Shown piece by piece: positions 11,203 to 39,033 of a DNA stretch of 64,000 nucleotides. This DNA is from Ylistrum balloti (Eukaryota): the NCBI RefSeq assembly GCF_031769215.1, contig NW_026782152.1, positions 62,001 to 126,000 of the forward strand, given 5' to 3'. Under the pieces are notes generated by a model. It did not search any database and was not told the origin of the DNA. It was given only the letters and a program-made list of their open reading frames with translations. The translations under genes and the position numbers were made by a program. Positions within the stretch are counted from its first letter, which is position 1, and every line of letters starts with the position of its first letter.

Positions 11203-11238
<36 letters not shown>
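11176..11238. repeat. Compound (TA)n(TG)n microsatellite
   Basis: Seen directly in the sequence. Confidence 0.95.
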
Positions 11239-11242
<4 letters not shown>

Positions 11243-12107: not shown

Positions 12108-12485
12108 GGACAAAATGATATTAAATACATCTAATTTTTTATCTATTAATTGACAAAATACTAACATGTGCTATTATTTCAGATAAATTTTGTTTTTCAA
12201 AAAGATTAACATTACTTTTGTAGGTTTTGAAATTTGAGTATTTTTTGCATAAACTGCTTGGGGGGAAATTTATTGCTAAAAAGTGAAGCAATAGGTCTTG
12301 ATTGATCTATGGTAAACTCCAACAGATCTAGATCTTAAATTAGCCTGAAATGCATATAACCCGCCTGTTATAATGTCAATGTTGATTTATTTCCAACATG
12401 TCACTTCTTAATCAACAAGCCAGAGTGTGAAGTCGAAAACTTCTGAGTCCATTGAAAAACTAACTAAGACAAGAAGATTTTAATA

Positions 12486-15406: not shown

Positions 15407-15878
15407 TCTTCTGTTCTAACTAGCCGGTCATTCGGGATCGTAGAGATGTTTTGCTAGATCTCAAGTAATGTTAACTTCCGGTAAGCGTTTGATTGATGCA
15501 GACATTGACAACACCGTAAACAATCTTCCTTCGTTTATGAAAAATGCAGATTTATAGATAGTTTGAAAGTGATTTTATTCAATTATAACACTCTAACCTT
15601 TTTATCTTATAAAAATGTTCTGAAGTGGAAATAATGCGCTATCTCAGTGGGTCTAAGGGTACGTTTATTACCATTTGTTCTCATTTGATACATGATTATA
15701 TCGGTAAGGACATGCAAATTTTCCAATAATGGCTTAATATCATTATAAAATATGTTTTAAAATAATGTGTGGCTCAAGAAACACATTAATATTTTCACGT
15801 TTGGATTGATCTTTCACATGGAAAGTTCAAAATATTGACATATATTCAAATATACACTGTATACAAGCTTAGTTTACC
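15407..15878. promoter_or_regulatory. Probable bidirectional promoter between ERG28 and vasohibin, with an ETS/GABP motif ACTTCCGG at 15474-15481
   Basis: Two divergent ATGs lie 472 bp apart. ETS motifs are characteristic of metazoan bidirectional promoters. Confidence 0.6.
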
Positions 15879-18800
15879 ATGTCGAAATCCAAACAACGGG
15901 ATCAACTACCACCATTTGGAACACTCGTTCGTGTTTCTGAACCCCCAGAAGAGGAAGAAAAGGGTTGTGTAAGGGTGAAGACAGTTAAAGGATCTAAAGG
16001 TGGAAATGACGATGACACACATGAAGAAAACGGAGTTCTATTTTGGGTTAACAAAAGTGGATTTCCAATTGACAATAGGACATGGGATCGAATGTGGGAT
16101 CACGTGTCGAGAATACATCCAGATGGTTACAGCATGATCAACAAAATTAGAAATAAATCTGATCTACCTCAGGTAAGATTTAATCAAATGACAAAATCTT
16201 ATTCAATTGTACAAGCACTGTATGCTTAATATAAAGTAAAATGCTAAATACTAAACGTACTTCCAAATTATTGGCATAGAGCATTATGGTTAAAGATACA
16301 TTTCTGTATTGCAAACTCTGGTATAATAGAAGATACAATTAGTTTATTTTCTTACGGCAAACAATACCATCTTTCGTAACATATCCGATTGAACCCGTAT
16401 ATTGATAAATCATACATGTGTTACTAGAAAGGCATTCCAGCATTGTGGTTATTCATAATAAGATGAATGACAGTGCAGCAGCCATTAATATTAACGAGGA
16501 GTAAATAATTCATTGAAAGCAAGTGCAATTGAAGACGTGTAAGCATGCTATCTGATGATAAATGTTGTATGTTTTGTCAGTACCACTTATATCTGTATCG
16601 AAAATCAAAAACAATTTTTTTTTCAGATTCCTATACAACAGGCACCATTAAACTTTCCGTCTTCCATGCCTGCACAAGAACGACTGGATAAGGTTCAAAA
16701 CTACATGAAGTCGCTTCAGTATCCTTTAGAAGGGATCAGTCATTTGAATAATGGTAACAATAAACAAATTTATTAATACCCTTAATTGAGATAAGTGATA
16801 TGATTTGAAGATAAATGTCAAAATTGCGCCACATACAAAGTAGTTGCTGCAGTACTTTCACGAGGGATATAAACTTCTTAACATTGATAAAATCACTCAG
16901 TCCAAAAACACAAAAAGGTCTTTCAAATCTGCCTGATTGATTTACTCCACCATTTTATGCTGAAGTACAAAACGTATTTACAAACCATACTTATAAAATT
17001 TTGTTTCGAATACAATTGGATAAATTATTGTCAGTGCTCAAATTCAGGGACGTATAGTATTCCACGTTCTTGTTAAAGCTTGACATTTTTTTATGTCTAT
17101 CATCATTAAATGAAAATGGTGTTGCAGTTCCGTTTTTATGTACCAATTTCAGTTGTAAACTTTCAATCCAATTACAGACCAGATTTGGTTACTGTATAGT
17201 GCTGGTCTCAGAAAATGCTCTTTAAACGCATTTATCCGTTAGGTTCGAACGGCACTCACCGATGGGAAGGTACAGTGATTATATAACACAGAGCTCTAGT
17301 TTTCCCTCCATACTTGCATCTAGAAACAATACCAGACTTATTGATATATAGGTGCATTATGTACAGAGAACAAGAGCCATTAGTCCGAGTACCATGGAGG
17401 ACGGGTTATTTTTCTTTTCGCGCGCTAATAAAAGATCATAATAGTATTCTATATGCTAGATAAATTTAAGGTGTCGTTCAAACCTGAATTTTAAGCATAT
17501 CAGGAAAAAACTGAATCATTTACTGTGAACATACCGATTAATCCTTTTATAACATTCTAAATATAAACCAGGAATATTAAAGATTGTATATTTGAAAATA
17601 CTAGCGTGTTTGTACGACAGTTGCGAAAATAGAAAGAAAATCCTTTATCATAAAATCGTTTACTAGCCGTCTTGTCTCACGCAAGAAACACTGGATGCCA
17701 TTTTATCATGTGTCTGTTATGAATGTTTCCTTAATGTGATTAAGATATAATCATACCGGAACACAGTTTTTTGAAATCAGGAAGCAGAGACCACTATCAG
17801 GGTAAGTTGTTTCTGTCATTCCACATGTTTAATTATATTATATATTTTTTCATTTATCGCACATTGTTAGCAATGTATTATGATATACTCATCGCTTTAT
17901 TGTTAACCAATTTTACAAGCAATATTATTGGTCCGATTTAATCATGTGAACACGATAGACACATATTTCCATGATTCATTATATCATGTTGCTTTATTTT
18001 TCCCTGTAATGAAGGTTGATGGACTGTGCCAGAGAAATGATTAAAGAAGCTCTTCCCATCAAATGCTTGGAGGCTGTGATTCTTGGGTTGTATCCTTCTG
18101 TCAAAATTAAATTATTGATGATTAATTACCTTTACATAAATAAAGATTATTGACTTTCAAGTCTAAAACCAATCTTTTGAATTGTTTAACGATATTTCTG
18201 AATTAGCTCTATCTAATTATTAATTGATTAATCATTTATTTATTGTAGATTAATAGTGTACTTTGTAAGATAATTATATTCAATTTCCGTAAACGTTTTA
18301 AATTTGGTTTTGATTTTAAAGACTTCCTCTTTAGTTTTTACCTTTGAAATATTTCGAAGATGGTTACTGCTACAATCTTGTGCAACGTCATCCTTTACAC
18401 AAAACAGATTTTTAACCAATGGTTTTCTTGGTGTCGAACGCTTTCCGCTAAGTTTTAAGAGTGTGTTTGGTGGAAATGTACATAGACATGTAGTACTAGG
18501 GATATATTATGCTGGTAAATATGGTTCCATTGGTATGAGCAGGAGGGATGAACTGATGTACAAACCTGTTGTCTATAAGGTAATTTACCACAAGTAAAAA
18601 ATATCATCTAAAAATGTACTGGACAAATTAAATCGAGTTTAAGACGTTTTACTAGACAAATTTAATCAAATTTAAGATATTTTCTCGACATTTTTTTGAG
18701 TCCTGGATGAATTCTATTTTCTTGTAACGTGCACGTGTCCAGACATTTTCTTCATAATTTTTCAGACATTTTTTCTCATAATTTGCATATATACTATGTA

Positions 18801-21800
18801 TGTTAAATTCATTAAACGTTGCGTTTATACATGTGTATTAATGTATTTTATAAGCAAGTTACTGCATGTTTCAGTCTCTCTCGGAATTGGTTTTTGAATT
18901 TGAAAGATCTTACAATATGTGTAAGTAATTTTCGTTATTCTGGAAAGTATATTTGCACCACAAATACCGATCAATTTTGTCATGTGATTATAAATCATTC
19001 TGGTAAATGATATATTTCGTCCATTTTATATACCAATAAGTCATGGAAATTTTTTCATTTATTTAATGTATATTTTGTTGATATTTCTGAAAAACAGTAA
19101 CGTTACACAGTCACTGTAGATATTTTTAAAAAATGATTAATAATTTTCGTTAGGAAAGCTAATTAGTATGATACGGAGTTACCTTTAATTCAATGGTTTC
19201 TAGAGAAGAATTCGTGTTTTCTATACAACTTTCTTTTGGAATATTATAAATTAAAGTAAAAGTACGGTAGCATTAATTACATAGTTTGTCCTTTCAGTTA
19301 AACATGACGTAAAGAAGGTAAAAATCGGGCTGCCTGTTCCGCATGATCCTCACAGCTATGAACTCATCAACTGGAAGGTACGTATATATATATATATCTG
19401 ACATATCTTGGCTTATTTGATATCAATATTTATCTAACGAAATAAGATAGATCTATTTCTGTTAAAATAAATCTCGCTTTTAAATAAATAAGTGAAATAC
19501 TGGTTTTTTTTTCATTGTCAGTTATTTATCATTAAAATATACTAAATTCCATATTGTCCCTCTGTCTACATTTTGTTAATGAACTATTAGTGCATGGGGA
19601 TTTTCCCATTTCTTCATTGAAGATAATATATTTGTGCCTTAGCAAAAAACTATTTGAATAGTAAAACTGAAAGTCCCTTTAGTACTTCAGTAACAGCAGA
19701 ATATACTGTATGGAAAATGTAAAGGCACATTTATTTGAGAAAAAAAACTGGTTTTACCATTAAAGTTTTTGTAGCTACATAAATTTATATGCATGTCTAA
19801 TTGTAGGCCCTTACTATAAACATGAACAAAATGAGTCAAAAAGAAGTGACCAAAGACCTTGATGTTGTGGCCAAGGAAATTCGGACAAAAGTAAGAGTTA
19901 TTTTGTATCATGTTGTTAAATGTTTCCCTTAAATTCAATTTTCTATCATACAACAACCTTACTTTTGTTGTATCATACACATTGTGGTTTTACCCTTTTT
20001 CCCAAATTTTGTTTTCAGTTACGTTTCATTAATCGTTCAATATCCGTTGTTCCTATTATATGGAATAACAGATACAGAAATTCGAAGTTAGCTGAGTTTC
20101 CATGCATAACGAAATGTCTAATTCTGGTTGCTATGGGAGATTACTTTATATTTATATTTAATATATGATGTATTTTTTATTAGGCCAAACTCAACTCTCT
20201 GAATCCCGAGGCTAGTTATGCGAAGGTAAAATGTCACCACTAGGTATATATAGATATATATAGATATGTTGTATCGTATTTAACAAAGGACGCCAGCTCT
20301 ACGTAGTCTGTCAGTATTATAAACACATCCTTTCTATAGTCCACGTACATCACACTCGGAGATCTCTTCAAAGTACAGCACAGTCTTCAGAATGTGAATG
20401 TCATAAAAAGTCCAAATTTAGTTGTTTATAATGCGATTGAAGCAAAATCTTTTGTAAAGCTATTATTTCTACGTGAGCTTTCTGTACTACTACTACTTAT
20501 ATTATCACTATTTATTATTCACGTGTTTATGCATGTTTATTACACTACAGTGTCTCATCTGATTTTCACATTATTTCTCGTCGCTTTTTGCAATCTATCA
20601 ACAAGTTTAATGCACATTCCATTCCATACAGCATGCTCGCCTCCAATAAAATAATACATTTTCGTGCTATAAAACCTTAAAATTGATATGAAGTTATAGT
20701 CTGTAGGTACGATACATCCGCCACGTTCACATTTCACAAATGTGTGATGCGTCTCATGTTTATTTCTTGATTCGTCTTTAGTGTTTCCCTTTATTTTTAA
20801 CCCGAATATTTTGAAGCTGTAGTACATATTTATTTATATAATGTGGTATTATTTAAGACGTTTGTTGAGTAATGTGAATGTGATTTTATATTGGTGCGGA
20901 TAGTTTAATGAAACGTGTTTTTAATCATTGTGGTTGATCACGATTGACTTGTTATTCTGTGAATATAACCATGGAATATGTTTTACCTATTACACATGTG
21001 TAATATAACTTATTGTGATGTCAGGTGTTGATAATGAAATGGCACACTGAAGACTCAATGTGACATACCAATGGAGTGGAGGCCACTAATAAGAAGCCGA
21101 AATGGCTTCCTGTGGAAATGTTCGTTTTCCACTTTACTTGAATTATCTATCATGTGATATGAGGGATCCTAATTTCTTTTCAATTTAATATTTGCTTTAT
21201 GAAACTTAATGAAAACGAATATAAGATCATAAATATGTTTGTGTGTAACTTTTGTGTTAGGAATACATTAATCTCAATAGCCATCGTCGTTTGCTATGGA
21301 ATCACTTTATCTATTCCTTACAGTAAGATAAAGTCGGAAATATATTTATCCCACAGGATTACATATAATGGATAAATGAAAAAGTGGCTGTAAATTCGCA
21401 AGAATTCGGATGTATGAATTACAGATACTAATCAATGAAGCCCTGTTTTCACAAATGACACTCAATAATCCCCATATGCTCACAATTTGTATCGAATTAT
21501 ATTCAAAGGAAAAAATCATCATCTTTTTTCACTCTGAATACTCACTCTGCCCGTCTCCAGAACGACTATGATATTGTGTCATTATCTATAGTGATTTTTT
21601 TATGTGTCAACGTACATATACAACTAGAAGATTTGTATTCACGCAGTGGTTTCTGCATGGATTGAAATGTATATTTAGCAGAAAATGGATCGAATTACTG
21701 CAAATTACATCTTTGTCATTTTACAAATAAATAAATGTGCACCATTTAAATCCGATCAGGGACAGAGGGAAGCTCATGACTGCCCTGTAGTAACACTTTA

Positions 21801-24800
21801 CTCCAGCCGTAAGGTAGGCCAGCTGTGTAATACAGCATGCCCGCTAGTTGTATCTTGTCCTGTGCCCTGCTGTATATTCAGACCTAACTGCTAATCACTG
21901 ACAGACTGTGCTATAAAGTCGATCCTTAGGGACTGTAAACTGAAAAATAAGATTTTTACAAGGTACGTTTTTTACCGTCTGTAATATCATAATACCCCTT
22001 TTATTACTATCACAATTGTTTATTTGTCAATGAATACATGTATAGCAATGATAAACACTAAACATAAACGCATATGTTACTCGACCTATCTTATGTTATA
22101 CATTGAATTTGGAATAATGTAAATTGAATATATGATAACACTTATTCGAATTGGTTGATATGAGTGCCAGAATGAGTTGAGGAGTGTATTAGCCACCGTC
22201 AATATATCATTCAATAAGAACTTTTTATAATCTTTCCCTTGGATTACTATATTTTTCCTACTTGATTTGCTTTTTCTTTCTTTTTTTTTTCTTAAATTAA
22301 TGTCACTTGAAAAAATAATGATTTTCAGCTTTGACAAATATTGCTTTTACATATACATTATACTGGTATATGTTTTTGTTTGAAGATGCTATTTATTGTG
22401 TTCTATCTTATTGGGTGAATCACACACGTCATACATTAACTGTCATTTTTCATTCATAAAACATGTTACCTATTACATATAACGCAATGGGATATTAATT
22501 TCCCTTTTTATGAATTTAAATCCAAGAAAGATGTCCCCCTTCAAGCTTGAAATTTGATACAGAGATATCGAATTGTGGTTTGGCTAGTTGTAATGTTGCT
22601 GCTAATTTGAATTGTAACAGGTACATCTTTGAGATTAGCCATCCATCTAGATCCTGTTCTTTGTATGTATTGTTCTTCAAATCTTGTTCTGGCTTTGTAG
22701 TACGCGAATCAAGGAATATATGCTAAAGACAGGTTGATATCGGCATGACCAGAGGTGATGTTTTGAAAATGGTTTGATAATATATCGATATTCGATACGA
22801 AATTAATTTGTATGAATACCACATTATTACACTTCAGTGTATATTTATTTTTTAATTGCAGTGTTTATTTTCCTTATGTGACCTATTGAACATATATTTT
22901 GTTTTTGGTAAGAGTTTGGATTGATTCAAGTTCTGTTTTAAATTTTCAGATTCCATCCATTAATGGTCATAAGGTACATTAATTCCGACAAAAATTTCCT
23001 TGCAGTTTACATGTTACACAATGCCGACTTACACATACAAACTTGTGTAGTAACGTGTCATATGTTTACGGTCGTACACAATTTTTACGAATTTTTTTAG
23101 CATTAGTGCATGGTGTCATGTTCATCGTAACAAGTAATTGTTATTGTTTTTGCTAATACACCAGCATGTTTTTAAACTAAAATATAAGAAGGTGGATTTA
23201 ATTGAAAATGTGGCATGATATTTATTGTTTGATGGGACAAGGAAAACTTTATTCTCGATATTTTTGTAGTAAATTATTTAAAATACCAGTCGTTGTGCAT
23301 ATTGCATAAATTGAAAATACTTTCTCATGTTAAAAACGTAATCGGTCGTTAAATATTCATACATTGGGTTTGGTTATTTTCAAAAGTAAGAGACGGTTTT
23401 TTTATGTATGTTTGTTTTAAAGGAGAAACTACCTTTCAGTGAATGAGGATAGGACCTGAAAGTTATTTAAAACCATGAGATTACAGTGTTATAGTATACC
23501 GCTCATCTCAGAAATCCCATATCATCACATATTACCGTAAATAATATTATAAAAAGGAGTGAAAACTGAAAGAAAATATGCTTTATTTAAATCAGGAACT
23601 TAGATTCATTGAATGTGTTTTTATACAGCATGGACATACTCACCTCACACAATGTTGTGAACACCGATGTAATATTAAATACATCGCAGTTGCCAGTCAA
23701 AACATTTTATTCGGAAGCTTGTTTGTAATTCACCTCTACAACGTTTTAGTCTGTAATGATTAATTTCAGTAAGTTAACATCTGCGATGGAACGTGGGTTG
23801 TTGAAGAAATATTTGGAACATTTCGTTTAGAAATATCGTAATTGCTGTGTCTGTGATAGTATATCAGTGTTATCAGGTTTAGAGTATAATGTTGTTCTTC
23901 AATACAACCTCAAATCATTCCCTTATCGATGAAGTCGTGACCATGGACAAGAAGTATGCAATCTATAATCATAAGGTAGAGGATTCGATAAATCATGGTT
24001 TCAAGGTCATAGGTCATGATAGGACACGGATCAAAATTTTCCTCTGTCATCATCATTTTTTCTATTCAGTAGAGTTACGGAAATCTTGAGATTAGTCTAT
24101 GGCGAACATAAATTTAGTGTACGAACTTCTTGATTTCAATTTTGTTGGAAGGAATTTTAAGTTTATCGCTACTAGTTTTGATCAACTTCAGAAGTAGCTT
24201 CTTAATCAGGAGTTTTTTTTAAAACGCATGCACCAGAAGCTTCCTTTTCTTTAACACTATGCATGAGTTTGGGTTTGGTTTAACTTCATTATAAATCGGT
24301 GATTACATTTCATTATTTAGATGTGCCAATTAAGTTAATGTTCGGTTAGGCTTCATCGCTGCAATACCGCATTAAATAAACCAGCAAAAATTATTCGTAT
24401 GTGATATAATTAGTTCACATGTTTCTGCTTTGCTATTAAATTCAAACCATTGTTCGACCAGACATTTTAGAGTTGTTATATATTTGAGAGTTTGTGTTGT
24501 TTCAATTTATAGTAAAACGATACCTTAATTTTAATAGTCCCGGTCGTGGGTTACTCAGCCTTCTTCACCAAGGAAAAATATCACCTCTATCGATATGACC
24601 ACTGGTAGAGACACATATGCGAGCAACAGTCTAAAGCAGGCATCAAAAATTTACAGATCGTGAGTACCTAGTTTGTCAAAATATTACAACTTGTCATCGC
24701 AAATGTTATGTCAAGCATACACAGATTTATAAATATATCAATAATTTATTAACTTAATGGTGTTCGTAACTTAAAACCTTGGAAATCTCACTTACCTAAT

Positions 24801-25154
24801 GTCCATTATATACAAATATGGACGAGACCAGTATATAACGTTTAGAGTATTTATCTCAAATTAAAAAAAAAAATGGCGTGTTGACGTTATTATTATATAT
24901 CATATTCATTAATAATTCATGTACAAATTTCAACATCTGGTTTGCTTCTTATACTCTTACATCGTTGAAATGTCATTTGTGATTTTATTAATATATTGCT
25001 GTAGTTTTCGACGATTTTCAGTAAGAATTGCGATTTTGTTTACAGATTGGTGTGTGCTTTTATTTTTTGCAGACAAACAATGGTAGGTTCATCCGACAAT
25101 GGCGCCGTTAGGAGGAAATCTACAGATCCCGCAGACTATCAGATACGAATATGA
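15879..25154 (+). CDS. VASH: Vasohibin (tubulinyl-Tyr carboxypeptidase), up to 12 exons, ~389 aa
   Basis: Exons: 15879-16172, 16627-16718, 17745-17801, 18015-18089, 18408-18579, 18875-18920, 19298-19377, 19807-19890, 20184-20225 (probable), 22950-22973 (probable), 24538-24659 and 25073-25154. Phases are consistent. Motifs present: WDRMWDHVSRIHPDG, QYNHTGTQFFEI, ALPIKCLEAVILG (catalytic Cys), HRHVVLG (His), GMSRR (Ser), HDPHS, and the conserved C-terminus YQIRI-stop. It is probably the single invertebrate co-orthologue of VASH1 and VASH2. Confidence 0.95.
16719..17744 (+). other. U12-type (minor spliceosome) GT-AG intron, vasohibin intron 2
   Basis: Donor is GTATCCTTT. Branch point TTTCCTTAAT lies at 17726-17735, 9 nt before the AG, and there is no polypyrimidine tract. 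Confidence 0.9.
18090..18407 (+). other. U12-type GT-AG intron, vasohibin intron 4
   Basis: Donor is GTATCCTTCT. A branch-like ATCCTTTAC lies at 18390-18398, followed by ACAAAACAG, with no polypyrimidine tract. Confidence 0.85.
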
Positions 25155-27699
25155 TGGCCATGTCATCAATGGCACTTGTGCAAGTGATCGTAGCTCTTAA
25201 CTCGGCTGATTTAAAAGTGAGAATTCACTTCCAGTATTGATCACCGTAAAGTGTTATGTTACGTTGTATGAGTCTGATTACTTTGATTGTGTATGGTAAA
25301 CTGGACTGAAATTGTACTGCAAAACTGTTACGGTTAATAAACAAGTTATGACTGTTGAGCGCTGCCTTGCGCGTGAGAGTTGCAGTTGTATATTCTAATA
25401 GAATTAGAGAGTACGATTAAGTATGTGAATGTGAATAACGTTTGATCAGTAAACAAAATAAGCAAGAGCAGGTGTGAAAAAGAGAGTTTTTAGGGGAGAT
25501 AGTGAGTAACAAAAACCTACACGTGCAGGTGTGAACGTGTGGCTGATTAGGAAGACGGCGAATAATTACGGTAGGGTCTCATTGTAAATTTCCCGTATCC
25601 AAGTAATCTAAACATTTCGTATCAATGGTCACGATTTTGGTTATGAGGTGACTGAATTCTGAGACAGGTGCTCTAGGAGCATGATGGACTTGAAACGATT
25701 ATGTTGCGTGACAGCTGATTGATTGTGAGTAGTTTGATTGTGAATCTGTTAGAGTGTGGCAGATATTGAGACTGACAAAAGAGATAACTGGATCACCAGG
25801 AAGACATCCTATTGTACTCGTAATGAGAATGATGTATATGAAATAATGTTGTTGATTTTATTTATTACAATTTATCTGTGATATAATTGTATTCATATAG
25901 GTTAATTATTCAAGTTGCTGAAAGCATGTTCCAATATGTTGACTTGCACTTTCAGTGTATTTTTTTTCGATATGTATTACTTTGATATGAGTGTTCTTGT
26001 TCATGCATCGTTTCCTCCCATATAATTCATATATCAGTTTATTGACAGCATAGTACTGCGAGTAATAGATTTTCGAACTGACACTTTTTGTGGTCTCTAG
26101 AATTAATGCATTATTTTAGAGATAAAGATAATAAAACAGTGTCATAACTTCAAATATTTTGAACTACTATTTGTTCATCTCAGTTTGGATGACGGAAAAC
26201 TTGGTTAAAGTCGTATTTGAATTTATCATTCAAATTTAATCTAGTCAGTGGTTCGTTTGATGACTAATGCTAATGACTAATGACTAATGTTCTGAGGGCT
26301 GGATATGAACTTGGGCTACAAATTAAGTTGAATATAGCTTCCTGTTTTTGTTTTTTGTTCCCCCTCCCCCACGAGATTTGAGTATTGATTTTTGTTCTGT
26401 TTAAATGCTCATGCTTGCCAACAAGCACAACATATGTCATACGTTAGAAAGAAATTTACTTTTTTTTTCAAACGTGACTCTTTTGATTAATACTATATCA
26501 TAAACTATATTTAACAACTTGCTGAAGCTATGAAATCGAATTAATGAAATGAACAAGACAAATCAGCAAAGATTCCGTGTATCAGGCGTTGAGTTTCAAT
26601 ACAAAGCACTAACGCCATTCAGAAGATGAAGAATATACATTTACCTGATGAGTATTACTCAGGTTCAGCTCTAGTAACTGTGGAATGTTAAATAGTGTTC
26701 ATATATGTTTATTCCTACTGCTTGAGACACAGGATGAGTCGTAGCCAATTTAAAATTGTTTACAATCAGACTGACTCATTTTGAAAATAAACTACATCAT
26801 GTTTAGTTGAATAATTCTCCATCACTGCTGTTATATTGATGGTACGACTGTCCTTTTTGTTTGCTTATTTTTAATATTTATTTTTGTGTGTCATTGATAC
26901 ATTGTTGATTTGATTAAAATGTTATTCATAGACAAAAAGATTCACAACGGTTTTATTTTTATCACATCTGTGAGGGCGTCTGTACTAATGTTCTTAAAAG
27001 TTTTAGTCTTGTCAGCTGGGGATATTTAAACTGAAAATAATGGCAACAGAAGTTATTATTTTTCACTTTTCATAATTTCATAAGTCTACCACAATCAACC
27101 TTGTTCAAATGTTGCTTTTTATTTTATTTTATTTTTTTTTATGTTTTTGTTTTTCTTCAGGCCTTTTAAAATCGAAAAAAAAATGCTGACATGAAATGCG
27201 CCAGTGATATGGTTCTCTGATTAATGGAAATAAAAGTTATGATAATATTTCTACAACAAATATTTCTTATCATTTTTGACAATAGTACAGAGTGAGGGGA
27301 GATAAGGGAGAGGTGTTATTTAGTAATCGGATTAAATTCGTTCAAGAAATAACGATATTTATTGTCCAAAATCATGGACTTTTTTTGTTCAGCAACATAG
27401 AATGTATTATTATTAAATAAATGATGCAAATAAGTGGTTGCACATACATAAATAAATATTTGCTTATACTTGTTCTCATCACACAGTTTTTAGAAACAGG
27501 TTCTTGCGTATTTATTTACTTTGACAAAAAGCAGCACGAAATCAGCACAACTGATTAATATTTTTCTTCATTTGAAAAGACACCAACATGCATTAACAAG
27601 TTAATAAGTACATAGATAACTCAATATTTTTTTCTCATTTTCTTCCTTTCCTGGAAAGACCACAATACATTTCCAAAAAATTAATTTTGGTACTTTTTT

Positions 27700-28495
27700 G
27701 CTGTTTTTAATTAAGGTATTCACCATTCGAATAAACTGAGAAATAACTTCTGTGGCAATTGTGGCCAGTTTTGGGCTTTGTCACTTGGATCTGTAAATTT
27801 GGTATTCAGATAACGTTGCAAATTTTTAGTCGGCTTTTTACCGTAAATCTGTTCATGGAGTTTCATAAAGCCGATGACGACTCTGTCATCTTCATCAGAT
27901 GGCGGTCCGTTGTTTATGCGTCTGTCCCAAAACAATTCATGTTATGGCCATTTCTTAAGAAGAATTAGAAGCTTTTTATCTTATTTAGGTTCTCCGCTTG
28001 TGCATTGTTAAATCTTCGGACTGATCCGAAATACAACAAGACCGACAGGCGCCTATCAAGAATTTTACAGTAATAGTTTGTCACTATTTCTGGCGAAGTG
28101 CTAAATGGATACTTCTCAAAATTTGATATGTATGTTCCCCTTGGTCCCTATTTTCTTATTACTATAATTTGTTTATGCTGACCAGAAAAACAAAACGGCC
28201 GCCTATAGATCGTTGTAGCTATTTCTTGGGGTCATTGGATGAATCTCTCGAAAGTTTTGTATTTTGGTTTCTCTTGGTCCCTAGTGGTGTCATTGAATTT
28301 TGAGTCTGCAAAGAAAACAAAATGGCCGACAGCCGTCCATCTTAGGTTTTGACGATCAAGGTCTTTTACTGCTATTTCTTGGCAAGTACTTGATGGATCC
28401 GTCACAAATTTCATATGTAGTTTCCTTTCTGTCCCTATTGATGACCAATCAATTTTCAGCCTACTAGAAATACCAAGACCTCTGGGATCCCATAT
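27700..28495 (-). repeat. HINE/Helentron-type repeat with degenerate internal subunits
   Basis: Recurrent aaaatggccg / atggcggtc / ggccgcc motifs. A GATCCCAGAGG head-like motif lies on the minus strand near 28490. Boundaries are approximate. Confidence 0.5.
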
Positions 28496-29691
28496 CTGTG
28501 ATTGATCACACTAAACACACTATAATACAGAATATCTTTATTTTTCTTTTTTCTTTCCTTTTCTTATAAAATACATGAAATATGACTATAAAGATAAATC
28601 CATTCATCATAACAAATAAAGATACTGAGCATTCTTGAACATGATAAACAACATTAAGATGAGGACAAAGTCATTCTTATCTACTTTACCGATCTGACGA
28701 CTAATGTACAAAAAGTACCCTTTTTAAGTAGTATGCAGATATTTTGTCTACAACAAAAAATATCAAAATTATAACTTTGTAACAATAGAATCATAATATG
28801 GCCTCACCTTTTCAAAAGCAACTTGTATGTTGTGGTCATGTGTAGGACACCTGGTAACTTTAATTGTACCTACATGTCCATACTTTCTCCCGAGACTTCA
28901 CACCTCAAATCTTTATGTAAAGAAAATATCCTCAAAATTGTCACATCATATACATTGTTTTTCTTACTGTGATAAAAGCTGCACATGACACCTTGTAACT
29001 TAAGTGTATATTCACATTCTTTCTCCTGAAAATTAACATCCGAAATCTTGACGTACAGACAACATCCTCTAAATAATAATATATAATTTTATTTTTTTTT
29101 CATTGTGATAGTTTCAAAATAAACTATTTTATGTAATCTATACAACTGCAATCTCGATGTATCATTTTTTTGCATTGCTTTATATCACATATTGCCCATC
29201 ATCAAAAGACAACATACATATATATCGGAAAATTGAAGAACATTGTGATAGAAGAACTAAGTAATATGCTTTTTCATGAAAATAACATTTCCTTAATACA
29301 CATGATCAATAATATATTATCATATCAGCATAAAAATTTAAGCATCATTTACCGTTTCCTCTGTAGGCTTAAAAAGATAGAAAAAGCAATTGAAATATGT
29401 TATAATGAGCAACATATCGTTGTCTATAGCATTTGAATATGTAGGACAGATACCTAATTACAGCCAATTAATTATTGAAATCAGCATTTGCAGTTTTTTG
29501 CAATTTGAACACCTGCCAAATATCAATTTACATGAGAATACAAAACGTGATCTGACTCTTAAGAAATCATATGAAAAGCTGACTGGTATACATTTAACAA
29601 TGACACAGATACAGGCACACTGGTGAGTTAGTCAAATATTCTATTTAATTCCATGAGGTAGTGAAACAAAATCTGTCACCTTCTGTCACTA

Positions 29692-30530
29692 AATAAGAGA
29701 TCCAAGAGTGACCTTGGTGCCTACTATTGTGTGATCTTTATTTGCTCTTTGAAAGTTGGATCTTTTCCTTTCTTTTTTCCTCTTTTCTCTGCTTTTGCTC
29801 TTACTGATAAGAAATTTACCTGCGAAATCCAAGACAATCGCCGGGAAGCCATTTTTTTTTCTGATCAGTTCCAAAAACACACAGGTACAAGTAGAGACCA
29901 AAGAGAACATACACTTGAAACTTGACAGAAATCCATTCAATATTTTATAAGAAATAGGGATAACAAACTTTACTAGGCGAAATCCAAGATGGCTGCCTGT
30001 CGGACATTTCGTTTTTCTGATCAGTCCCAAACTCAAACAGATACAACTAGGGATCAATGAAAACATACACATGAAACGTGAGAAAAATATATGCATTAAT
30101 ACTCTAGAAATAGTGGTACCAATCTTTCAAAGTGAAAATCCAAAATTGCCAAATGGGCACAACTAGGGACAAAGGGGCACCTATACATGAAATCTGAGAA
30201 AGGTCTATGCAGCGAGTTCTCAAGAAATAGCAAAGAACTCAAGAAATAGCAATAACAATCTTTTTGAATACCAAATCCAAGATGGCTACCTTGTTGGCCA
30301 TTTTGTTTTTCTGTTCAGACCCAAAATCAAGTGGGCACACCAAGGGACAAAATGGAATCTACATAGGAAATCTGGGAGAGATCTATCTTGTACTTCTCAA
30401 AAAAGAGTGATAACAAACTTGCACAGTCAAAATCCAATATGGAAACATGTCATCAATTTTATTTCTTGATAGTGATAACAAAAATTGTTTACCATCAGAC
30501 AGACAGACGGACCGATGGACCGTAAAACTG
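29692..30530 (+). repeat. HINE/Helentron-type repeat: AAGAGATCC head, tandem degenerate subunits, terminal (GACA/GACG)n
   Basis: Head reads aataagagatccaagagtgaccttgg. aaatccaagatggc-like units recur at about 29825, 29980, 30135 and 30275. cagacagacagacggaccgatggac lies at ~30496-30520. Confidence 0.65.
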
Positions 30531-31687
30531 AAGTAAATGTAGCTGACCTGTATGTCACATAACCCTGTACTCTTTCATATTAGATAATATCATACCATGA
30601 GTGTTTTGTTCAAAGAGACTGTAATATCCACAGTGCTACCTGACCACCTTAAAAAAATCTGTACAGTAGCTGTCTGTAATATTGAAACCACTTAGGATTT
30701 TATACCATAAACACATACCAACAAATGTACAGTTCAAGAAATTACTTAATTGATAAATAGGTTTTTATTGAGTAAGAAAATAAATATTGAAACATCTTAA
30801 GCCTACATCAATTCAAGCATGGAAACCAAAAATAACTTCAAGATCTTAGTAAAAACAAGTACTTAAATTATGACAAGATGCACACTAAATAAATAATGTT
30901 AAAATTAATTTAAATATGTTATGATAAAGAAGTAGTGCTTTTATGACATAATACTGGTGTAAAAATACTGTTGTTCATTCATACCATGTCAATGTACACT
31001 TAAATGAACATAGTTCAATGATTAATCAAGTATCAAAATATGTTATCTTTCATTGGATAGACAACATACAAAAAATATCAAAAATCTTTAACAAAATAAA
31101 TAATGTTACGCAGGATGCTAAATTATCAACCTGAAAACACTATCATCAACTTTATGTTTTTTGTTATTGCAACAAACAATCATACATTAAATAATTTCAA
31201 CAAAACAGAACTATTTTATAACTTGAATAAAATAAGACTAAAATGTATATTCTTTGTCAATGTGAAGAAAATAAACAGCTGGTTAACAGTTCAAACTTCT
31301 TTATGCCATTGCATTTTCATATGGATTTCATATTCTTATTTTCAGCACTGGTCCTCTCTCTTTCACTATATCAATCTATTCTGACACAATCAAATATCAG
31401 CTATGTGCATGTCTGTTTAAAATTTTTACATTATTTCATTATGTCAACTGGTACGGGCATATTTATTCTGTTTACTTTGTGAGCATCAGCTTTCAAGAAA
31501 GGTTTTAGTTGCTATCGGCTACCAAAAGAGGAGTAAAGGACAGCAAGCTAAGAATGTGGCATAGGAAAATAATTCACTAATATTTTGTTTCAAGCCTGCC
31601 TCAGTTTAAGCCTATCTTATTTATAATCATTGAAACAACCAGATATTTTTCTGTATACATAACATTACAAATGCTGCTTAGTTGGAA

Positions 31688-34600
31688 TCATTCAAGTAAA
31701 AATCTGCTGAGGAGAGGAAGATGGTCAGAGGGGTGGTTTTTACAAGGAAAAGTTCCTATCTGGTTGAGCTCTTTCTCTGACATGAGTCCCCAGCATCCCA
31801 ATAATGTTAAAGATCCTTCTTTGGCATCACCATTGTTGCGATTGTAAAAGATGAAATCCACAATCGAACTGTCATTTCCATGGTGTGTGGTCACTTCACT
31901 GGCAGATTTTCCCAGTCGCTCTATCCAGTGTCTGTAGCTGGACTTTAACACAAGATGATGCCACAGACATCCAGTGTCAAGACCCATCTCTGAGGTGATT
32001 CTTTGTATATCCCAAGGATTCTGTGCTGAAGAACTAGAAGGAAGTTCATTCTGACAGTGATCCTGTGAAGATGACTTTTGATTTGACGGTTGCATATCAA
32101 ACTGATTTTCTTTGTAATATGTGCAGTGGTTGGAGATATTTAATTCAAACGGGAGAAAATTTCTAGGCAGATACATATCCATTCCTCTTCTGCCTTCCGT
32201 TTGACCAGACATAGTCTTTGCTAGGAGTCCCTCAAATTGGATATATCCACTAGCCAGGAATTTGTATAACTTGCTTTTTGGCACCAAGTTAAAGTCACCA
32301 CAAACAATGGTGGGAATGTGAGTTTCTTCCCCTCTTGCAGTCACTGTGTGTGTCAATTTGTTAATCTCGGCCAGAAGAAGAACTATTTGTGCTAATTTGA
32401 CGTCTCCTCGTCTAGGATTAAAGAGAAGATGGGTATTAGCAACACAAACCTCGGTTGGATGTTTCTGCTGATTGACTGGTTGTAGCTTCATTATCATGGC
32501 CACATTGTCACGGTCTAGGATCCTGAACTGTCTGTAATAACACAAATGACTGCATTTGACCATTTTGAACTCACTGGTCTTGTAAAATGTAGCACAGCCA
32601 TCAAATTTGTCATCACCTGTCCTCTTCTGATACTCTCCCTTATAACCTGTTCAATACAAAATAATTGCATTTGATATTGATTTTAATATATGGTCTGAAT
32701 ATCTAAGATTTTTTTTAAAAGAACTGTTGGCTTTCATAATAAACAAGTTTTCTCACCAAGAAAGAATGAAGTCTCTGGTACTTTATACAATATCACTCTG
32801 ATCACAAACCAAAATAACAATGAAAACAAAACAGACTTCACTGCGGCATTTTACGTTTCAGAAAAATGAAGCAAATGATATTGAGCATAAAATGTTATTC
32901 ATGGTAATGAGAGTACATGATCTGATCCATTCATATGATGATACTTATTAATATTTTGCAACAAATTTTAAGGAAAATTACTAAACTGCTTATTGAAACC
33001 ATCATAAATGTACATGTAGGTAAACCAACTGACACTGCAGCAGAAATATTTTCAATTAAACTTACCTAATTTTGCCAGTTCAGGTGTGAAGAATGATTTG
33101 TAGTGTTCCTCGTTAACCTCTTGTAGACACAGAATCTGATAAAATAAAGAAACAAATGCCACTCAGCTGTGGTAATCCATAGAGATTTGGCGCAAAGTCC
33201 CAATCCACAGTCCACATTCGGACGATGGGCTGAGAATTGGAGCCAAATACCTGTGTGATAATCTTGGCCTTCCTCCCTGACCTTGAAAATCAACTTGGCC
33301 CTAATGCCTAATAAATGGCACAAGTTGTATTCAATTCATTTTCATTAAAACTAGTATTTTCCAGTGTCGCAAAAAAAAAAAAAAAAACCTTGATCTTGGA
33401 CCAATAACAACAGAGAACTTAATGTCAGAAACATCTCAGTGAAATCTCATCATAAGGTGGTGTCTTTGATATGTATTAACTATGTGACTTTGACCATCAC
33501 CTTGTTGGAGACATGTGTTATAATTACCTTGGGCCAAGAATCTGAGTGTGTGGTAAATTATGTGAAGTCTCAATAAAATAAGTACAGAGTAATTTCTCTG
33601 AATGTTGCAGAAAAAACAGCAGTTAGGTAACATTAAGTTCTTGTGACCTCAACTTTTGATATGTGACATTAACCTTGACACGTATCAGTACTGTTCTGGT
33701 ACCTAATCTATGATCTGAGAATCTTTTAAAGTTCAGTGAAAAACACTATCAATTACACTTATACAAGTGTAACAACTGCCTTTTATTCCCTCATTTTAAC
33801 CAGTTAATAAAATTTGGCATGACTTCAGTGTCCACAGAAAAATCAAACACCAGTAAGTTAAGTTCTTTGTAACATACAAAAGTACAGTTATCTGGTAATG
33901 GTATAAACAGAAACTATACCTCATGGTTGACTGAATATTATTTTATAGAATGACCAACAGCAGTAGGCAATCAGCAGCTATAAATAAAGTCTGTTGCAAT
34001 ACCGAAAGCCTTCGACAATGTCAAGGTAGATTCTATAAATATCCTGAAGTAACCTGTCGCTAATAATTATCCAATTTAAAGCAATATGTTAATAGTTCTT
34101 TAACATTATAATAATGAACAGAAACTTAGGCTATAAAAAGAATAATGCAACATATGTCGAAGTTTTATAATCTAGGCCTACTTTCAAAAGATAAGAAGCT
34201 TATTCATAAAAAGGTTGTATAACTCATTGTATCCTGAAAAAAATTAAACATTTTGATTTAAGTATCCGTTAAAATCCTACCAATTGTTTACAGCAAGTAT
34301 CATACAGTAGTATACTCATTAAGTCTTGTTTCAGCACTTTTCAAAATGAAAGTGATGTGCTAAAATATGATAGTATTAATTGCAATTTCATGCATAGTGC
34401 TTATTTGTAGCAATCCTTGTGGTTGCATAAGTTCATGAATATCTCAATTTTTCAAAAAAGTGTTTATTACAATATGCTAAATCTGATATTTTATGTATAA
34501 TGTTTTCAGTATTGTGTTAGCTTTTGTCATTAATCTTTAACTATTTGTGTTTTGTGATTTTGTATCCTGTGATTTTCTAGATTCTGGAGAAACATTAAAA

Positions 34601-37166
34601 TTGAAATGGTTTAAAACCTCATATTTTTTTTCTTGGGTTTACAATTACACTGACATCATAAATTAAAAGTAAAAAAAATAAAACTACACTTTGAATTTAC
34701 AGATCAGTAATAAAAATAAATTGTATGTATACACACATATACTTACATCAGGCAAATGTTCTTGAATCTCTCGAAGGAGAAGATGTTTCCGATAATTCCA
34801 TTGTAGATACTTTTCCTCTGATTTATAATACAAATACATGTTATCCTCCAGCAGGTTTTGGGCCAAAACATTATAGGACATGACTGTAAAGTCTGTGCCA
34901 TGATGCTGAAGACGGCCAGATAAACACTGCCTTCCAGTGGTAGTCCATTCCCATGTCCTTTTTGACTTGTAAGAAGGGTAATAAGGTACTTGGTCTTTGT
35001 CTTCTACAAAGATATATCATACCATGTATATTACAAATACGTCTGAATTAACATAGCAAATAAGACTGTTGAAAGCTTCAAGCTTCTCTCCTTTCTCATA
35101 TTGTACATTATACTCTGTTAGACTTTTAAATTATGTTTAAAAAGACCAAATTAGTAAGCGACAAATTTATTCAGTAATCTTAATACTAGTAGGATTTTTT
35201 TTTCTGGCAAGTTCAGATCATCATTTCCAAAATTTGATGAGTACAGTTGCAAGGAAATTTTATGGGTTTTCAATGATCACGAGTTCCCCAAGAAAAGTAT
35301 TTGACCAGGACTCAAATATTTGGGTTCCAAAGCTCACTGTCATTAGAACTGTTTCTTATGTCACACACTCAGATGGCACACAATAACTAAAAGCAACAAT
35401 CAACGGAATATGTTATTGCCTCATACATCGATTATCATATGGACAATACAATTTGGTTTCCAAATTTTTAATTATGCTAACCAGACCAAAAGGGAGTTTC
35501 GTCATTAGTTCCTACTTTCATTTACTACTTCATTTTTTTTTTTGACAAAATCATGTTTCATCCAAAAACTTAATTTGGTTTCTGTATACAATTAAAACAT
35601 TTAAATCCTATTTTACATTATTTCATACTGCCATCCTAGCATATTAGAATCCATTCTATTGATGATGATGAAACATAACCAGGAAGGCGAGATACCATAT
35701 CATGTGATAATTCATTATCTTCCCACAGAGGCCACCACAAAAATATCAAAAGTTTACTGTTATCATCACTAGTCAACCATCAATATCTCAAGTATTTGAT
35801 TTTTTAATTATCAAATCATTTAAGAGCTAGAAAGAAAAGAAACTGAGTATGGTAACTTTGGTATGTGATAACATCTCTTTTAAATGTCATTGTTTCAGGA
35901 CATATCCACAGTTTTGCATATACTATAATGCAGGGTTCAGGGCAGTGGAATAACCTGACACCTGAAATTCCTTCTTTATAAATAACAATCAACTCCATAG
36001 ACTGGCAATGCCCTGGAGTATCACAACTGGAAAATCTCCTGAGAAATTTTCAACAATTTTAGATAAAAAAAGGTAAAAACACATAGGAGTCTGTATGACT
36101 CTGAAAACTGGTCTGGACTGTTAAACTACATTGTACTCCAAGATGAATGCATCAAACTTCATCAACTGAGCTATATGTTCCATTTGACTCTTCAGTCTAT
36201 TTGTCCCCAGAAGGCTCCTGACCTAGCGATACTAAGTCCTTCAATTTAAGTCATCATCCAAACATTAAATATACTATGAAGAGCCAAATGCAGCACAGAT
36301 CACGTGATACAGGTGTAGGTAAGTTAGTAACAATTAGAAGTACTACAACCAAGTGAGGAAAATGCTAGTTAAATCAGACATGGACTGTATACAAATTGTA
36401 AGCTGTATTGATCTATGTTACTCCTAAAACATAAAAGGCTGCTGGTCAGCTGATTTTCTTTTCAACATCTTTGTGCTGACTGTGGAAATTTCAAGCTATG
36501 TAAATCTCTTACATTGTTGTTAGAATAAGATTATGGATATCCTTAACCAGTGGAGGTCGCTCTCATATATATATATAGGAATATATATATCAATTATATT
36601 TACTCTTTTCCTCTTTTAAGTCCCAACTTACCTTGACTTAAATCTTTATCCTCTGTTTTATGCTTCTTTGATGGGGGATTTAATGAACACTGCCTAGCTT
36701 TGTTTTCAATCTCACTAAATGATTCAAACTGTCTTGGGTAACTGGAATGAGAATCACTTTCAAATTGTTTAGAATCCTTTAGTCTTGCAAACAGTGACCC
36801 CATTGGGTTATTTGTCACCTGATTTACTGCAGAACTATCTAAATCTCTGAATGGCATAGATTTGTTTGTCTCTCTGTTATCACTAGTTCCTGTTAAATCA
36901 ATGACTACTGGGTTAACATTATCAACAGTTAAATCAATGATTGCTGGATCATCTTGACACATCTGCTCCCTTATCACATCCGTGAGTTGTGAACTAGTTG
37001 AACTGCTACCACTACAGTATCTCCTTTTCTGAGACTTTATACTTGAACTGCCATCTTCTGTCATCCCTCCTGCTTCATTGCTTTTTGCGTCCATAATACA
37101 GCTTCCATTTAGGACTAGCCTTGAAAACCTAGCAACAAGATTTTTCCTGTTTAATTTTGAAAGCAT
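31688..37166 (-). CDS. ANGEL2: Protein angel homolog (EEP-fold, CCR4 family; RNA 2',3'-cyclic phosphatase), 4 coding exons, 606 aa
   Basis: Exons 37166-36632, 35003-34747, 33135-33066 and 32646-31688 (1821 nt, phases 1, 0, 1). Motifs present: KRTWEW, FTVMSYNVLAQNLLEDN, ILCLQEV, DRDNV, CVANTHLLFNPRRGDVKLAQ, CGDFN, VDFIFY and PSDHLPL. Probably the single co-orthologue of ANGEL1 and ANGEL2. Confidence 0.93.
33330..33720. repeat. Degenerate HINE-type repeat in Angel intron 2
   Basis: Recurrent gtgac(c/t)ttgac motifs, the same family as the repeats at 44-45 kb and 52-53 kb. Boundaries are approximate. Confidence 0.4.
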
Positions 37167-38082: not shown

Positions 38083-39033
38083 TTATGACTGTTTCTGTTT
38101 CTCCTGATAATTGTTGGTCACCAAATTGTAAACAAGCATGACTAGTTTATTCATCAAAATTTGAAATCCTGGTACATACAATTTCAGTTTTACCAAGAAC
38201 TTGAAAGTCATAATCCTAAGTTCATTAGCAATGGACTGGCGCTCCCTGTTTTGACCAAAGACATCATACATAAAATTAATCACAGCTTCTGGTGTGTACA
38301 ACCTCACTTTGTGCAATATATTCAGCCCATCTGTAAAAGCCTTGGCCATAAAATCAAAATCATCTGGTGGATGTTTCAATGCTTGTAACAAAACTTTATT
38401 TTTTATTTGTTCACAAATGGTATATGTTTCCAGGTAACCGTTTAAACAAATGTTGTTCTGGTCTGTTATTCCAAGATGAGTACCAATAAATCTCCAGAGA
38501 TAAACATAATCATCTAAATCGTTGACATTAGGTTGTATACCAAAATCTTGTGGATGTATAATGATAGCTGCAACAAAACCACTCTGTACCAATGACATAT
38601 CATATTGAGACAGGTACACTTTTTTATCTGTTTTCTGTTTGGTCATAACCTCTGCCACAACATCGTGCATTTTTCTAACCTTATCGAGAGATTTTCTAGC
38701 AGGAGAATCTGCATCACACAAGTCACTTAGATGCCATTTTATAACATGTACAAGGGTCTGAATATAACGATAAAGAGACTTTCTGGGTGTATCTGATGCA
38801 TTTGTAAACACCAAAGGCTCCAACAGATTGGAGACACTTAGTCCACACACTAGTGAACATAACATGGCAAATACGCAGCTGGAAATGTTTTTACGGAAGA
38901 ACAACTGTCCTCTCATTAATTTACTGGCATCACAATGCCTTGGATGGTTATGGGGCTCACTAATCTGGCCACAAGATGATGTGTGAGCTCCTTTCATAAG
39001 GAATTCCAAGTTTCTGAATTCACATCTCTCCAT
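38083..39033 (-). CDS. ER-bound oxygenase mpaB/mpaB'/rubber oxygenase (DUF2236) family protein, single-exon CDS, 316 aa
   Basis: Long uninterrupted ORF with family-like motifs: RGQLFF, PLVFT...S.TP.KSLYRY..T..HV..W, VRKMH (putative haem-ligand His), SQYDM.LVQSGF, LDDYVYLWRFIG.HLGI.D.NNIC. A splice acceptor just upstream (tttcacag at ~39075) implies a 5'UTR intron. Confidence 0.8.
   Translation of the reverse strand: MERCEFRNLEFLMKGAHTSSCGQISEPHNHPRHCDASKLMRGQLFFRKNISSCVFAMLCSLVCGLSVSNLLEPLVFTNASDTPRKSLYRYIQTLVHVIKWHLSDLCDADSPARKSLDKVRKMHDVVAEVMTKQKTDKKVYLSQYDMSLVQSGFVAAIIIHPQDFGIQPNVNDLDDYVYLWRFIGTHLGITDQNNICLNGYLETYTICEQIKNKVLLQALKHPPDDFDFMAKAFTDGLNILHKVRLYTPEAVINFMYDVFGQNRERQSIANELRIMTFKFLVKLKLYVPGFQILMNKLVMLVYNLVTNNYQEKQKQS

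What the first reader, a model, noticed from the sequence alone, without database searches (positions are those of the whole stretch)
15879..37166. Vasohibin and Angel are tail-to-tail neighbours, as in both human paralogous pairs
Seen: VASH (+) and Angel (-) are adjacent and convergent, with no gene detected between 25154 and 31688. Established: human VASH1-ANGEL1 (14q24.3) and VASH2-ANGEL2 (1q32.3) are each adjacent convergent pairs. Inference: the linkage predates the protostome-deuterostome split. Such a durable pairing of a tubulin detyrosinase with an RNA cyclic phosphatase suggests a shared regulatory constraint, for example enhancers in the long VASH introns or 3' region.
Basis: partly seen in the sequence, partly recalled or inferred. 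Interest (0 to 1): 0.7.

Follow-up and report, generated by a model that had tools for sequence, protein, structure and literature searches.

The report
Ancient ERG28-vasohibin-Angel gene neighbourhood
In this scallop-like bivalve the tubulin enzyme gene vasohibin lies tail-to-tail with the RNA-end enzyme gene Angel and head-to-head with ERG28, a three-gene arrangement also found in amphioxus and partly in fish, a limpet, an acorn worm and a tick, so it is a real but fairly ordinary case of very old gene-order conservation.

Summary
VASH (+, 11 coding exons, 15879-25154) and a single-copy ANGEL-type CCR4/EEP gene (-, 31688-37166) are convergent neighbours. The 6.5 kb between their stop codons has no Pfam-bearing ORF, tRNA or Rfam RNA, only two copies of a dispersed repeat.

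ERG28 (-) sits head-to-head with VASH, 472 bp between start codons.
- Same order and orientation (ERG28(-) VASH(+) ANGEL(-)): Branchiostoma lanceolatum, and Crassostrea gigas from a published gene table.
- VASH-ANGEL convergent: teleosts, for both ANGEL1 and ANGEL2.
- ERG28-VASH only: Lottia and Saccoglossus.
- ANGEL-ERG28 with no VASH between, in the orientation a VASH deletion would leave: Ixodes.
- Broken or not seen within 10 kb: Capitella and the sea urchin.

Repeat insertions in the gap and several lineage-specific breaks argue against a strict constraint.

This is a new member of a known kind: ancient microsyntenic pairs, of which about 600 are described. No indexed paper discusses this pair. 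The scan had not noted it on other DNA.

The parts
13937..15406 (-). ERG28 gene. Three exons detected: 15406-15263 (starting at an ATG), 14487-14395 and 14083-13937. The 3' end was not mapped.
   Evidence: Pfam PF03694 hit at window 14398-14574. tblastx to the annotated Erg28 genes of Lottia, Branchiostoma and Saccoglossus, E about 1e-21.
15407..15878 (.). 472-bp head-to-head interval between the ERG28 and VASH start codons. Inferred to be a shared (bidirectional) promoter region.
   Evidence: Coordinates. The same 5'-5' arrangement with 0.4-2 kb spacing occurs in C. gigas, Lottia (64), Saccoglossus (62), Branchiostoma (58) and metagenome contig L042 (84, 85). Promoter activity itself was not tested.
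15879..25154 (+). Vasohibin (tubulinyl-Tyr carboxypeptidase) gene. Approximate exons: 15879-16172, 16624-16722, 17740-17802, 18016-18093, 18409-18579, 18866-18916, 19303-19380, 19807-19890, 20184-20231, 24538-24660, 25073-25154.
   Evidence: The catalytic Cys (LPIKCLEA), His (HRHVVLG) and Ser (GMSRR) motifs are visible and are invariant columns in alignment A1.
20232..24537 (+). Long 4.3-kb VASH intron of unique sequence. A candidate place for regulatory elements; untested.
   Evidence: No second copy in the genome at E<=1e-60. No relative's DNA was available to test conservation.
25155..31687 (.). Tail-to-tail interval between the two stop codons. No gene detected. Contains two dispersed-repeat copies (27940-28456 and 29692-30470).
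   Evidence: Nearest poly(A) signals are at 25336 (+) and 31462 (-).
31688..37166 (-). ANGEL-type CCR4-family endonuclease/exonuclease/phosphatase gene. Exons 37166-36632 (N-terminal, unconserved), 35003-34744, about 33150-33064, and about 32650-31688.
   Evidence: EEP motifs are present: SYNVLAQ, LCLQEV, CGDFN, SDHLPL.

Best explanation
The VASH-ANGEL convergent pair is two thirds of an ancestral three-gene neighbourhood, ERG28(-) VASH(+) ANGEL(-). [quoted passage not shown] It survives whole in slowly rearranging genomes (this pectinid-like bivalve, oyster, amphioxus) and in pieces elsewhere:
- VASH-ANGEL in both vertebrate paralogons;
- ERG28-VASH in a limpet and an acorn worm;
- ERG28-ANGEL in a tick that has no VASH between them.

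Shown here: the gene identities, the order and orientation in each lineage, and that none of the outer neighbours compared matched the window.

Inferred: (a) the ERG28-VASH half is held by a shared promoter region only a few hundred bases long; (b) the VASH-ANGEL half persists because the two 3' ends are packed closely (1.2-7 kb between stop codons), which leaves little neutral room for a breakpoint and possibly lets 3' UTRs abut or overlap. The constraint is weak enough that several lineages have broken it. The three enzymes have no known common pathway, so the linkage is structural or regulatory rather than functional.
For: Window anatomy.

Branchiostoma lanceolatum (L012): Erg28(-) 6834-7994, Vasohibin(+) 10001-12858, Exo_endo_phos(-) 14063-18307. 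All three are matched by the window's exons. The amphioxus EEP gene hits ANGEL2 at 1e-35 against PDE12 at 2e-8.

Crassostrea gigas: Dcaf4, Angel2(+), Vash2(-), Erg28(+) carry consecutive gene ids (PMC13280272).

Teleosts: Chanos ANGEL2(+)/Vasohibin(-) 5.0 kb apart. Lampris ANGEL1(+)/Vasohibin(-) 6.9 kb apart.

Ixodes hexagonus: Angel(+) then Erg28(+), 0.8 kb apart, no VASH exon in 24.7 kb. Its Angel hits ANGEL2 at 1e-94. This is exactly the triplet with VASH removed. VASH was reported absent from insects and nematodes (PMC2194728).

Lottia and Saccoglossus: Erg28(-)|VASH(+).

Flanking genes differ in every lineage and give no tblastx match to the window.

Randomised gene order yields about 0.015 conserved pairs per genome under the criteria of Irimia et al. 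2012 (PMC3514665), so chance re-association is negligible.
Against: The linkage is not universal.
- In Capitella, Angel is flanked by GCD14 and Vezatin, and VASH is on another scaffold.
- In Lottia a Methyltransf_FA gene follows VASH.
- Saccoglossus and sea urchin show no Angel exon within 10 kb. The Saccoglossus locus holds 3.7 kb of N.
- Two unidentified Angel contigs and about 80 metagenome VASH loci show no partner, except one ERG28-VASH case.

Only 10 kb of flank could be read, so several negatives are weak. No cnidarian, sponge or placozoan was sampled, so the age is bounded only at the bilaterian ancestor.

The mechanism is inference. There is no RNA, chromatin or conservation data, and the gap in the window tolerates repeat insertions.
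Confidence: 0.85

Rival explanations
1. Neutral inertia. The triplet is ancestral, but it is kept only because these genomes rearrange slowly and the intergenic intervals are short. No regulatory or transcriptional coupling exists.
For: Several lineages broke the block without losing the genes. Dispersed repeats have inserted into the VASH-ANGEL gap. Convergent pairs are not the class enriched among conserved pairs, which are mostly 5'-5' (PMC3514665). No conserved non-coding match was found to any fetched locus.
Against: VASH-ANGEL is retained in bivalves, amphioxus and both vertebrate paralogons, while none of the outer neighbours compared gave a match to the window. The tick kept the two outer genes together even after VASH went. 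The ERG28-VASH spacing is promoter-sized in five lineages.
Confidence: 0.4
2. Active cis-regulatory constraint. Enhancers or other elements for one gene lie in the other gene's introns or 3' region, or the convergent transcripts overlap and regulate each other.
For: Both post-duplication vertebrate copies kept the pairing. The 4.3-kb VASH intron next to the 3' end is unique sequence, not repeats. Conserved pairs in general show excess co-expression and intergenic conservation (PMC3514665).
Against: None of the three genes is a developmental transcription factor, which is the usual target in genomic regulatory blocks. No conserved non-coding element or transcript overlap could be shown here. 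The nearest poly(A) signals allow UTRs of about 200 nt that would not meet.
Confidence: 0.3
3. Independent re-association. The genes came to lie together separately in molluscs and chordates.
For: Absence of the pairing in Capitella and Lottia, and within 10 kb in sea urchin and Saccoglossus.
Against: Scallop, oyster and amphioxus share the same order, the same orientation and the same third gene (ERG28). The tick remnant fits too. Chance expectation is about 0.015 pairs per genome.
Confidence: 0.02
4. An unrecognised gene lies between VASH and Angel, so they are not true neighbours.
For: 6.5 kb is room enough. RNA data could not be consulted.
Against: No Pfam family at E<=0.01 in any ORF of 50 aa or more, no Rfam family and no tRNA. 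The longest ORF (135 aa) lies inside a dispersed repeat. The oyster annotation gives the two genes consecutive ids.
Confidence: 0.07

Closest known systems
Conserved ancestral microsyntenic pairs (CAMPs) of Irimia et al. 2012 (PMC3514665)
   Same: Unrelated genes kept adjacent across phyla for more than 550 million years, retained best in amphioxus, molluscs and vertebrates. One half of the block is a 5'-5' pair with very short spacing.
   Different: VASH, ANGEL and ERG28 are not mentioned in that paper's main text, and its supplementary lists are not held. Whether this pair is already listed is therefore unknown. The VASH-ANGEL half is 3'-3', the minority class.
Bidirectional-promoter pairs such as HSPE1-HSPD1
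   Same: ERG28 and VASH are divergent, with 0.4-2 kb between coding starts in five lineages.
   Different: No shared function or co-expression is known or tested. In vertebrates ERG28 is no longer next to VASH; from my memory, human ERG28 lies about 1 Mb from VASH1 on 14q24.3 (not tested here).
Genomic regulatory blocks (developmental gene plus bystander genes)
   Same: Long-lived linkage of functionally unrelated genes, and retention after whole-genome duplication.
   Different: No developmental transcription factor is in the block, and no conserved non-coding elements were demonstrated.
Human VASH1-ANGEL1 (14q24.3) and VASH2-ANGEL2 (1q32.3)
   Same: Same two gene families, adjacent and convergent. 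Teleost orthologues of both pairs were confirmed here. Human co-location is supported by gene lists in PMC3732286 and the Prox preprint.
   Different: There is a single pair in the bivalve, and ERG28 is attached to it. Human contigs were deliberately not fetched, so human orientation and spacing rest on my knowledge.

Membership tests
Vasohibin (Pfam PF14822, transglutaminase-like Cys protease) | Significant match to the family profile over its length | tested here: met
   Exon-wise hits cover profile positions 1-222 of 245, each over the cut-off. 88% identity to a scallop VASH over 11 exons.
Vasohibin (Pfam PF14822, transglutaminase-like Cys protease) | Cys-His-Ser catalytic triad | tested here: met
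   LPIKCLEA, HRHVVLG and GMSRR are present in the window translations. They fall on invariant columns C165, H200 and S217 of alignment A1.
ANGEL subfamily of CCR4-type EEP enzymes | Closer to ANGEL than to CNOT6/6L, nocturnin or PDE12 | tested here: met
   ANGEL2 5.9e-44 against PDE12 4.5e-12, CNOT6L 4e-8 and nocturnin 2e-5. All named hits in the word search are angel homologues.
ANGEL subfamily of CCR4-type EEP enzymes | EEP catalytic motifs intact | tested here: met
   LCLQEV, CGDFN and SDHLPL are present. Enzyme activity (2',3'-cyclic phosphatase) was not tested.
Conserved ancestral microsyntenic pair (Irimia et al. 2012 criteria) | [quoted passage not shown] | tested here: inconclusive
   VASH-ANGEL is seen in Mollusca (two bivalve orders), Cephalochordata and Vertebrata. 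ERG28-VASH is seen in Mollusca, Hemichordata and Cephalochordata. ERG28-ANGEL is seen in Arthropoda. Flanks of 10 kb cannot test the 'four or fewer intervening genes' rule in Lottia, Saccoglossus, sea urchin or Capitella.
Conserved ancestral microsyntenic pair (Irimia et al. 2012 criteria) | The genes are phylogenetically unrelated (not tandem duplicates) | tested here: met
   Three different Pfam families: PF03694, PF14822 and PF03372.
Genomic regulatory block | A developmental regulator gene whose enhancers lie in neighbouring bystander genes, marked by conserved non-coding elements | tested here: not met
   The three genes encode enzymes or a scaffold protein, not transcription factors. No non-coding match to any fetched locus, although only distant species were available.
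Bidirectional promoter pair | 5'-5' orientation with under about 1 kb between starts | tested here: met
   472 bp between the ERG28 ATG (15406) and the VASH ATG (15879). 383 bp in C. gigas. Transcription start sites and co-expression were not testable.

The most novel reading that the evidence does not exclude
ERG28-VASH-ANGEL is a selectively maintained transcriptional unit of the bilaterian ancestor. It would combine a shared promoter on one side with interacting convergent 3' ends on the other, so that tubulin detyrosination, RNA 2',3'-cyclic-phosphate removal and sterol synthesis are co-regulated. That coupling would also explain why both vertebrate duplicates kept the pair.
Probability: 0.15. 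Interest if true: 0.6.

Novelty: new member of a known kind. Interest (0 to 1): 0.35.

Why it matters
It adds a well-documented three-gene example to the catalogue of gene neighbourhoods that have survived since the bilaterian ancestor. It includes a convergent (3'-3') pair, which is the less understood class.

The tick locus, where the middle gene is gone but its two neighbours still touch, is a clean natural deletion. It helps date the block and shows how such blocks decay.

The pair could serve as a test case for a simple question: do tightly packed 3' ends alone preserve gene order, or is there real regulatory coupling? It does not change what is known about the enzymes themselves.

Tried and rejected
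- **RNA evidence.** No data on 3' UTRs, overlap or expression.
- **Short-exon PDB searches.** Searches for the VASH C-terminal exons gave nothing useful. Bivalve and fish proteins settled the exons instead.
- **Wasted look-ups.** The look-ups for Mytilus Angel isoform X2 and Owenia VASH were not on record.
- **Unidentified ENA contigs.** Two contigs carrying Angel showed no VASH exon in 10 kb. The taxon is unknown and the flank is shorter than the distance in the window, so these are uninformative.
- **Conserved non-coding sequence.** None was found against any fetched locus, but all of them are too distant.
- **Outer neighbours.** Methyltransferase, SPRTN, Vezatin, GCD14, TARBP1 and Methyltransf_FA genes give no match to the window. 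The amphioxus and Capitella methyltransferase genes do not match each other.
- **Metagenome scan for VASH.** 80 loci were returned. One ERG28-VASH case (L042), no Angel. Most loci are short and unnamed.
- **Protein atlas search.** It added nothing on arthropod presence.
- **Window species.** The idea that the window is Crassostrea gigas was rejected. Its VASH is 65% identical to oyster VASH and 88% to Argopecten.
- **Steps deliberately left out.** The spliced gene models were not joined; exons were searched one by one by reference. No human contig was fetched.
Full report
**What is in the window**

The window is AT-rich eukaryotic DNA (GC about 0.33) from a 648-Mb genome.

On the + strand, Pfam Vasohibin (PF14822) matches six separate exons between 16035 and 19386, each above the curated cut-off. 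The central exon hits human VASH1 and VASH2 structures at about 4e-19. The representative search with that exon found 479 vasohibin clusters. From these and a follow-up word search I obtained full-length bivalve proteins.

The Argopecten irradians protein P0311 aligns at 88% identity in eleven pieces from 15879 to 25151. These include a 16-residue exon at 20184-20231, an exon at 24538-24660 and a last exon ending ...DYQIRI, with the stop codon ending at 25154. The same C-terminus closes Mytilus and Pinctada VASH (...DYQLRI). A fish VASH2 ends ...GYQIRI exactly at its annotated CDS end. The organism is a pectinid-like bivalve, not an oyster (65% identity to oyster VASH). The catalytic Cys, His and Ser motifs are present.

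On the - strand, the 291-residue last exon (32563-31691) hits human ANGEL2 at 5.9e-44. PDE12, CCR4, CNOT6L and nocturnin follow at 1e-12 to 1e-5, and every named relative is an angel homologue. Further exons lie at 34983-34744 and 33150-33064. The unconserved first ORF from 37166 has a strong donor at 36631 whose phase fits an acceptor at 35003. That exon has no homologue support.

Both genes are single copy in this genome.

**The interval between them**

The two stop codons are 6,533 bp apart. Twelve ORFs of 50 aa or more in the interval have no Pfam family at E<=0.01; two give weak sub-threshold matches. There is no Rfam family and no tRNA.

Two stretches, 27940-28456 and 29692-30470, belong to a dispersed repeat with more than 150 matches in the genome and an internal 156-bp tandem unit. 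The longest ORF of the interval lies inside that repeat.

No transcript evidence exists, so a non-coding or lineage-specific transcript cannot be excluded.

**A third gene belongs to the block**

Pfam Erg28 matches the - strand at 14398-14574. tblastx against annotated Erg28 genes of three phyla maps three exons, the first starting at an ATG at 15406. ERG28 and VASH are thus head-to-head, with 472 bp between start codons.

**Survey of other lineages**

Neighbours come from the look-up of encoding contigs, with flanks of at most 10 kb.

| Lineage | Arrangement found | Calls |
|---|---|---|
| Branchiostoma lanceolatum | Erg28(-), 2.0 kb, Vasohibin(+), 1.2 kb, 731-aa Exo_endo_phos gene(-). Same order and orientation as the window. 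| 58, 61, 66 |
| Crassostrea gigas | Published table lists Dcaf4(-), Angel2(+), Vash2(-), Erg28(+) under consecutive gene ids, with 1.4 kb and 0.4 kb gaps. | 10 (PMC13280272) |
| Chanos chanos | ANGEL2(+) and Vasohibin(-), 5.0 kb apart. | 27 |
| Lampris incognitus | ANGEL1(+) and Vasohibin(-), 6.9 kb apart, with an LRR gene on the other side of ANGEL1. | 52 |
| Lottia gigantea | Erg28(-)/VASH(+), then a Methyltransf_FA gene; no Angel exon. | 64, 65 |
| Saccoglossus kowalevskii | Erg28(-)/VASH(+); no called gene or Angel exon in the next 10 kb, which holds 3.7 kb of N. | 62, 65 |
| Strongylocentrotus purpuratus | Neither partner within 10 kb. | 59, 61 |
| Capitella teleta | Angel lies between GCD14 and Vezatin at a scaffold end; VASH is on another scaffold. 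| 14, 54 |
| Ixodes hexagonus | Angel(+) followed 0.8 kb later by Erg28(+); no VASH exon anywhere in 24.7 kb. | 26, 37, 67 |

For amphioxus, the window's exons match all three genes. The amphioxus EEP exon hits ANGEL2 at 1e-35 against PDE12 at 2e-8.

The two teleost loci confirm with tools that both vertebrate paralogous pairs are convergent neighbours. Human co-location is supported by gene lists. I did not fetch human contigs.

The Ixodes arrangement is precisely the triplet with the middle gene removed. Its Angel hits ANGEL2 at 1e-94. Vasohibin was reported absent from insects and nematodes (PMC2194728).

A metagenome scan gave 80 VASH loci, mostly short and unnamed. One (L042) shows Erg28 head-to-head with VASH, and none shows Angel.

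Outside the triplet, none of the neighbours compared matches the window.

**Interpretation**

Identical order, orientation and third gene in two bivalve orders and amphioxus, together with partial copies in vertebrates, a gastropod, a hemichordate and a tick, cannot reasonably be convergence. Randomised gene orders give about 0.015 conserved pairs per genome under comparable criteria (PMC3514665).

Why it lasted is not shown. For ERG28-VASH the promoter-sized spacing fits the well-known class of 5'-5' pairs, which dominate ancient conserved pairs. For VASH-ANGEL I favour tight 3'-3' packing, which leaves little room for harmless breakpoints and may include abutting UTRs.

Plain inertia in slowly rearranging genomes is nearly as likely. 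Several lineages broke the block, and repeats have inserted into the gap in the window. The 4.3-kb VASH intron next to the 3' end is unique sequence. It is the obvious place to look for conserved elements, but no close relative's DNA was available.

**Novelty**

[quoted passage not shown] No indexed paper links VASH with ANGEL or ERG28 in terms of synteny. The supplementary lists of the main survey are not held. I rate the finding a new member of a known kind, of moderate interest.

**Limits**

- Flanks were 10 kb at most.
- No non-bilaterian animal was sampled.
- No RNA data were available.
- Spliced models were not joined; exons were searched separately by reference.
- Statements about human coordinates and the ERG28 position rest on my memory.

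Noticed in passing
window 38083-39033 (-): Intronless 316-aa ORF immediately upstream of Angel's start. It has only a weak, sub-threshold match to the MPAB_Lcp_cat oxygenase domain (E 6e-4) and no solved relative.
   Followed up: partly
window 27940-28456 and 29692-30470: Two oppositely oriented copies of a dispersed repeat with more than 150 matches (65-84% identity) in the genome and an internal 156-bp tandem unit. The 135-aa ORF at 29689-30096 lies inside it.
   Followed up: partly
L009 (Ixodes hexagonus) 10001-19571: Angel and Erg28 are adjacent and co-oriented, with no vasohibin between them. This looks like the scar of a VASH deletion from the ancestral triplet.
   Followed up: partly
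window 49200-61990 (+): A run of Glu/Lys-rich coiled-coil-like exons, followed by a 1259-aa ORF (58211-61990) with no Pfam family. It is probably one large gene. It is not the Dcaf4 gene that follows Angel in the oyster.
   Followed up: no
window 6550-6909: The only run of N in the window (360 bases). It was left untouched.
   Followed up: no
L042 (metagenome contig JAAUXT010079430.1) 299-1893: An unnamed organism with Erg28 exon 1 about 525 bp upstream of VASH and divergent from it. This is a further instance of the head-to-head pair.
   Followed up: partly
P0145, P0225, P0234, P0261: Vasohibin-domain proteins occur in Syssomonas, a choanoflagellate, a chytrid fungus and Cyanophora. The family is therefore far older than animals.
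   Followed up: no
L010 (Chanos) 19387-24356: In the fish VASH2 gene, no VASH exon other than the last was found in the 4.9 kb of the gene held in the locus. In this window a 4.3-kb intron also lies just before the last two exons.
   Followed up: no
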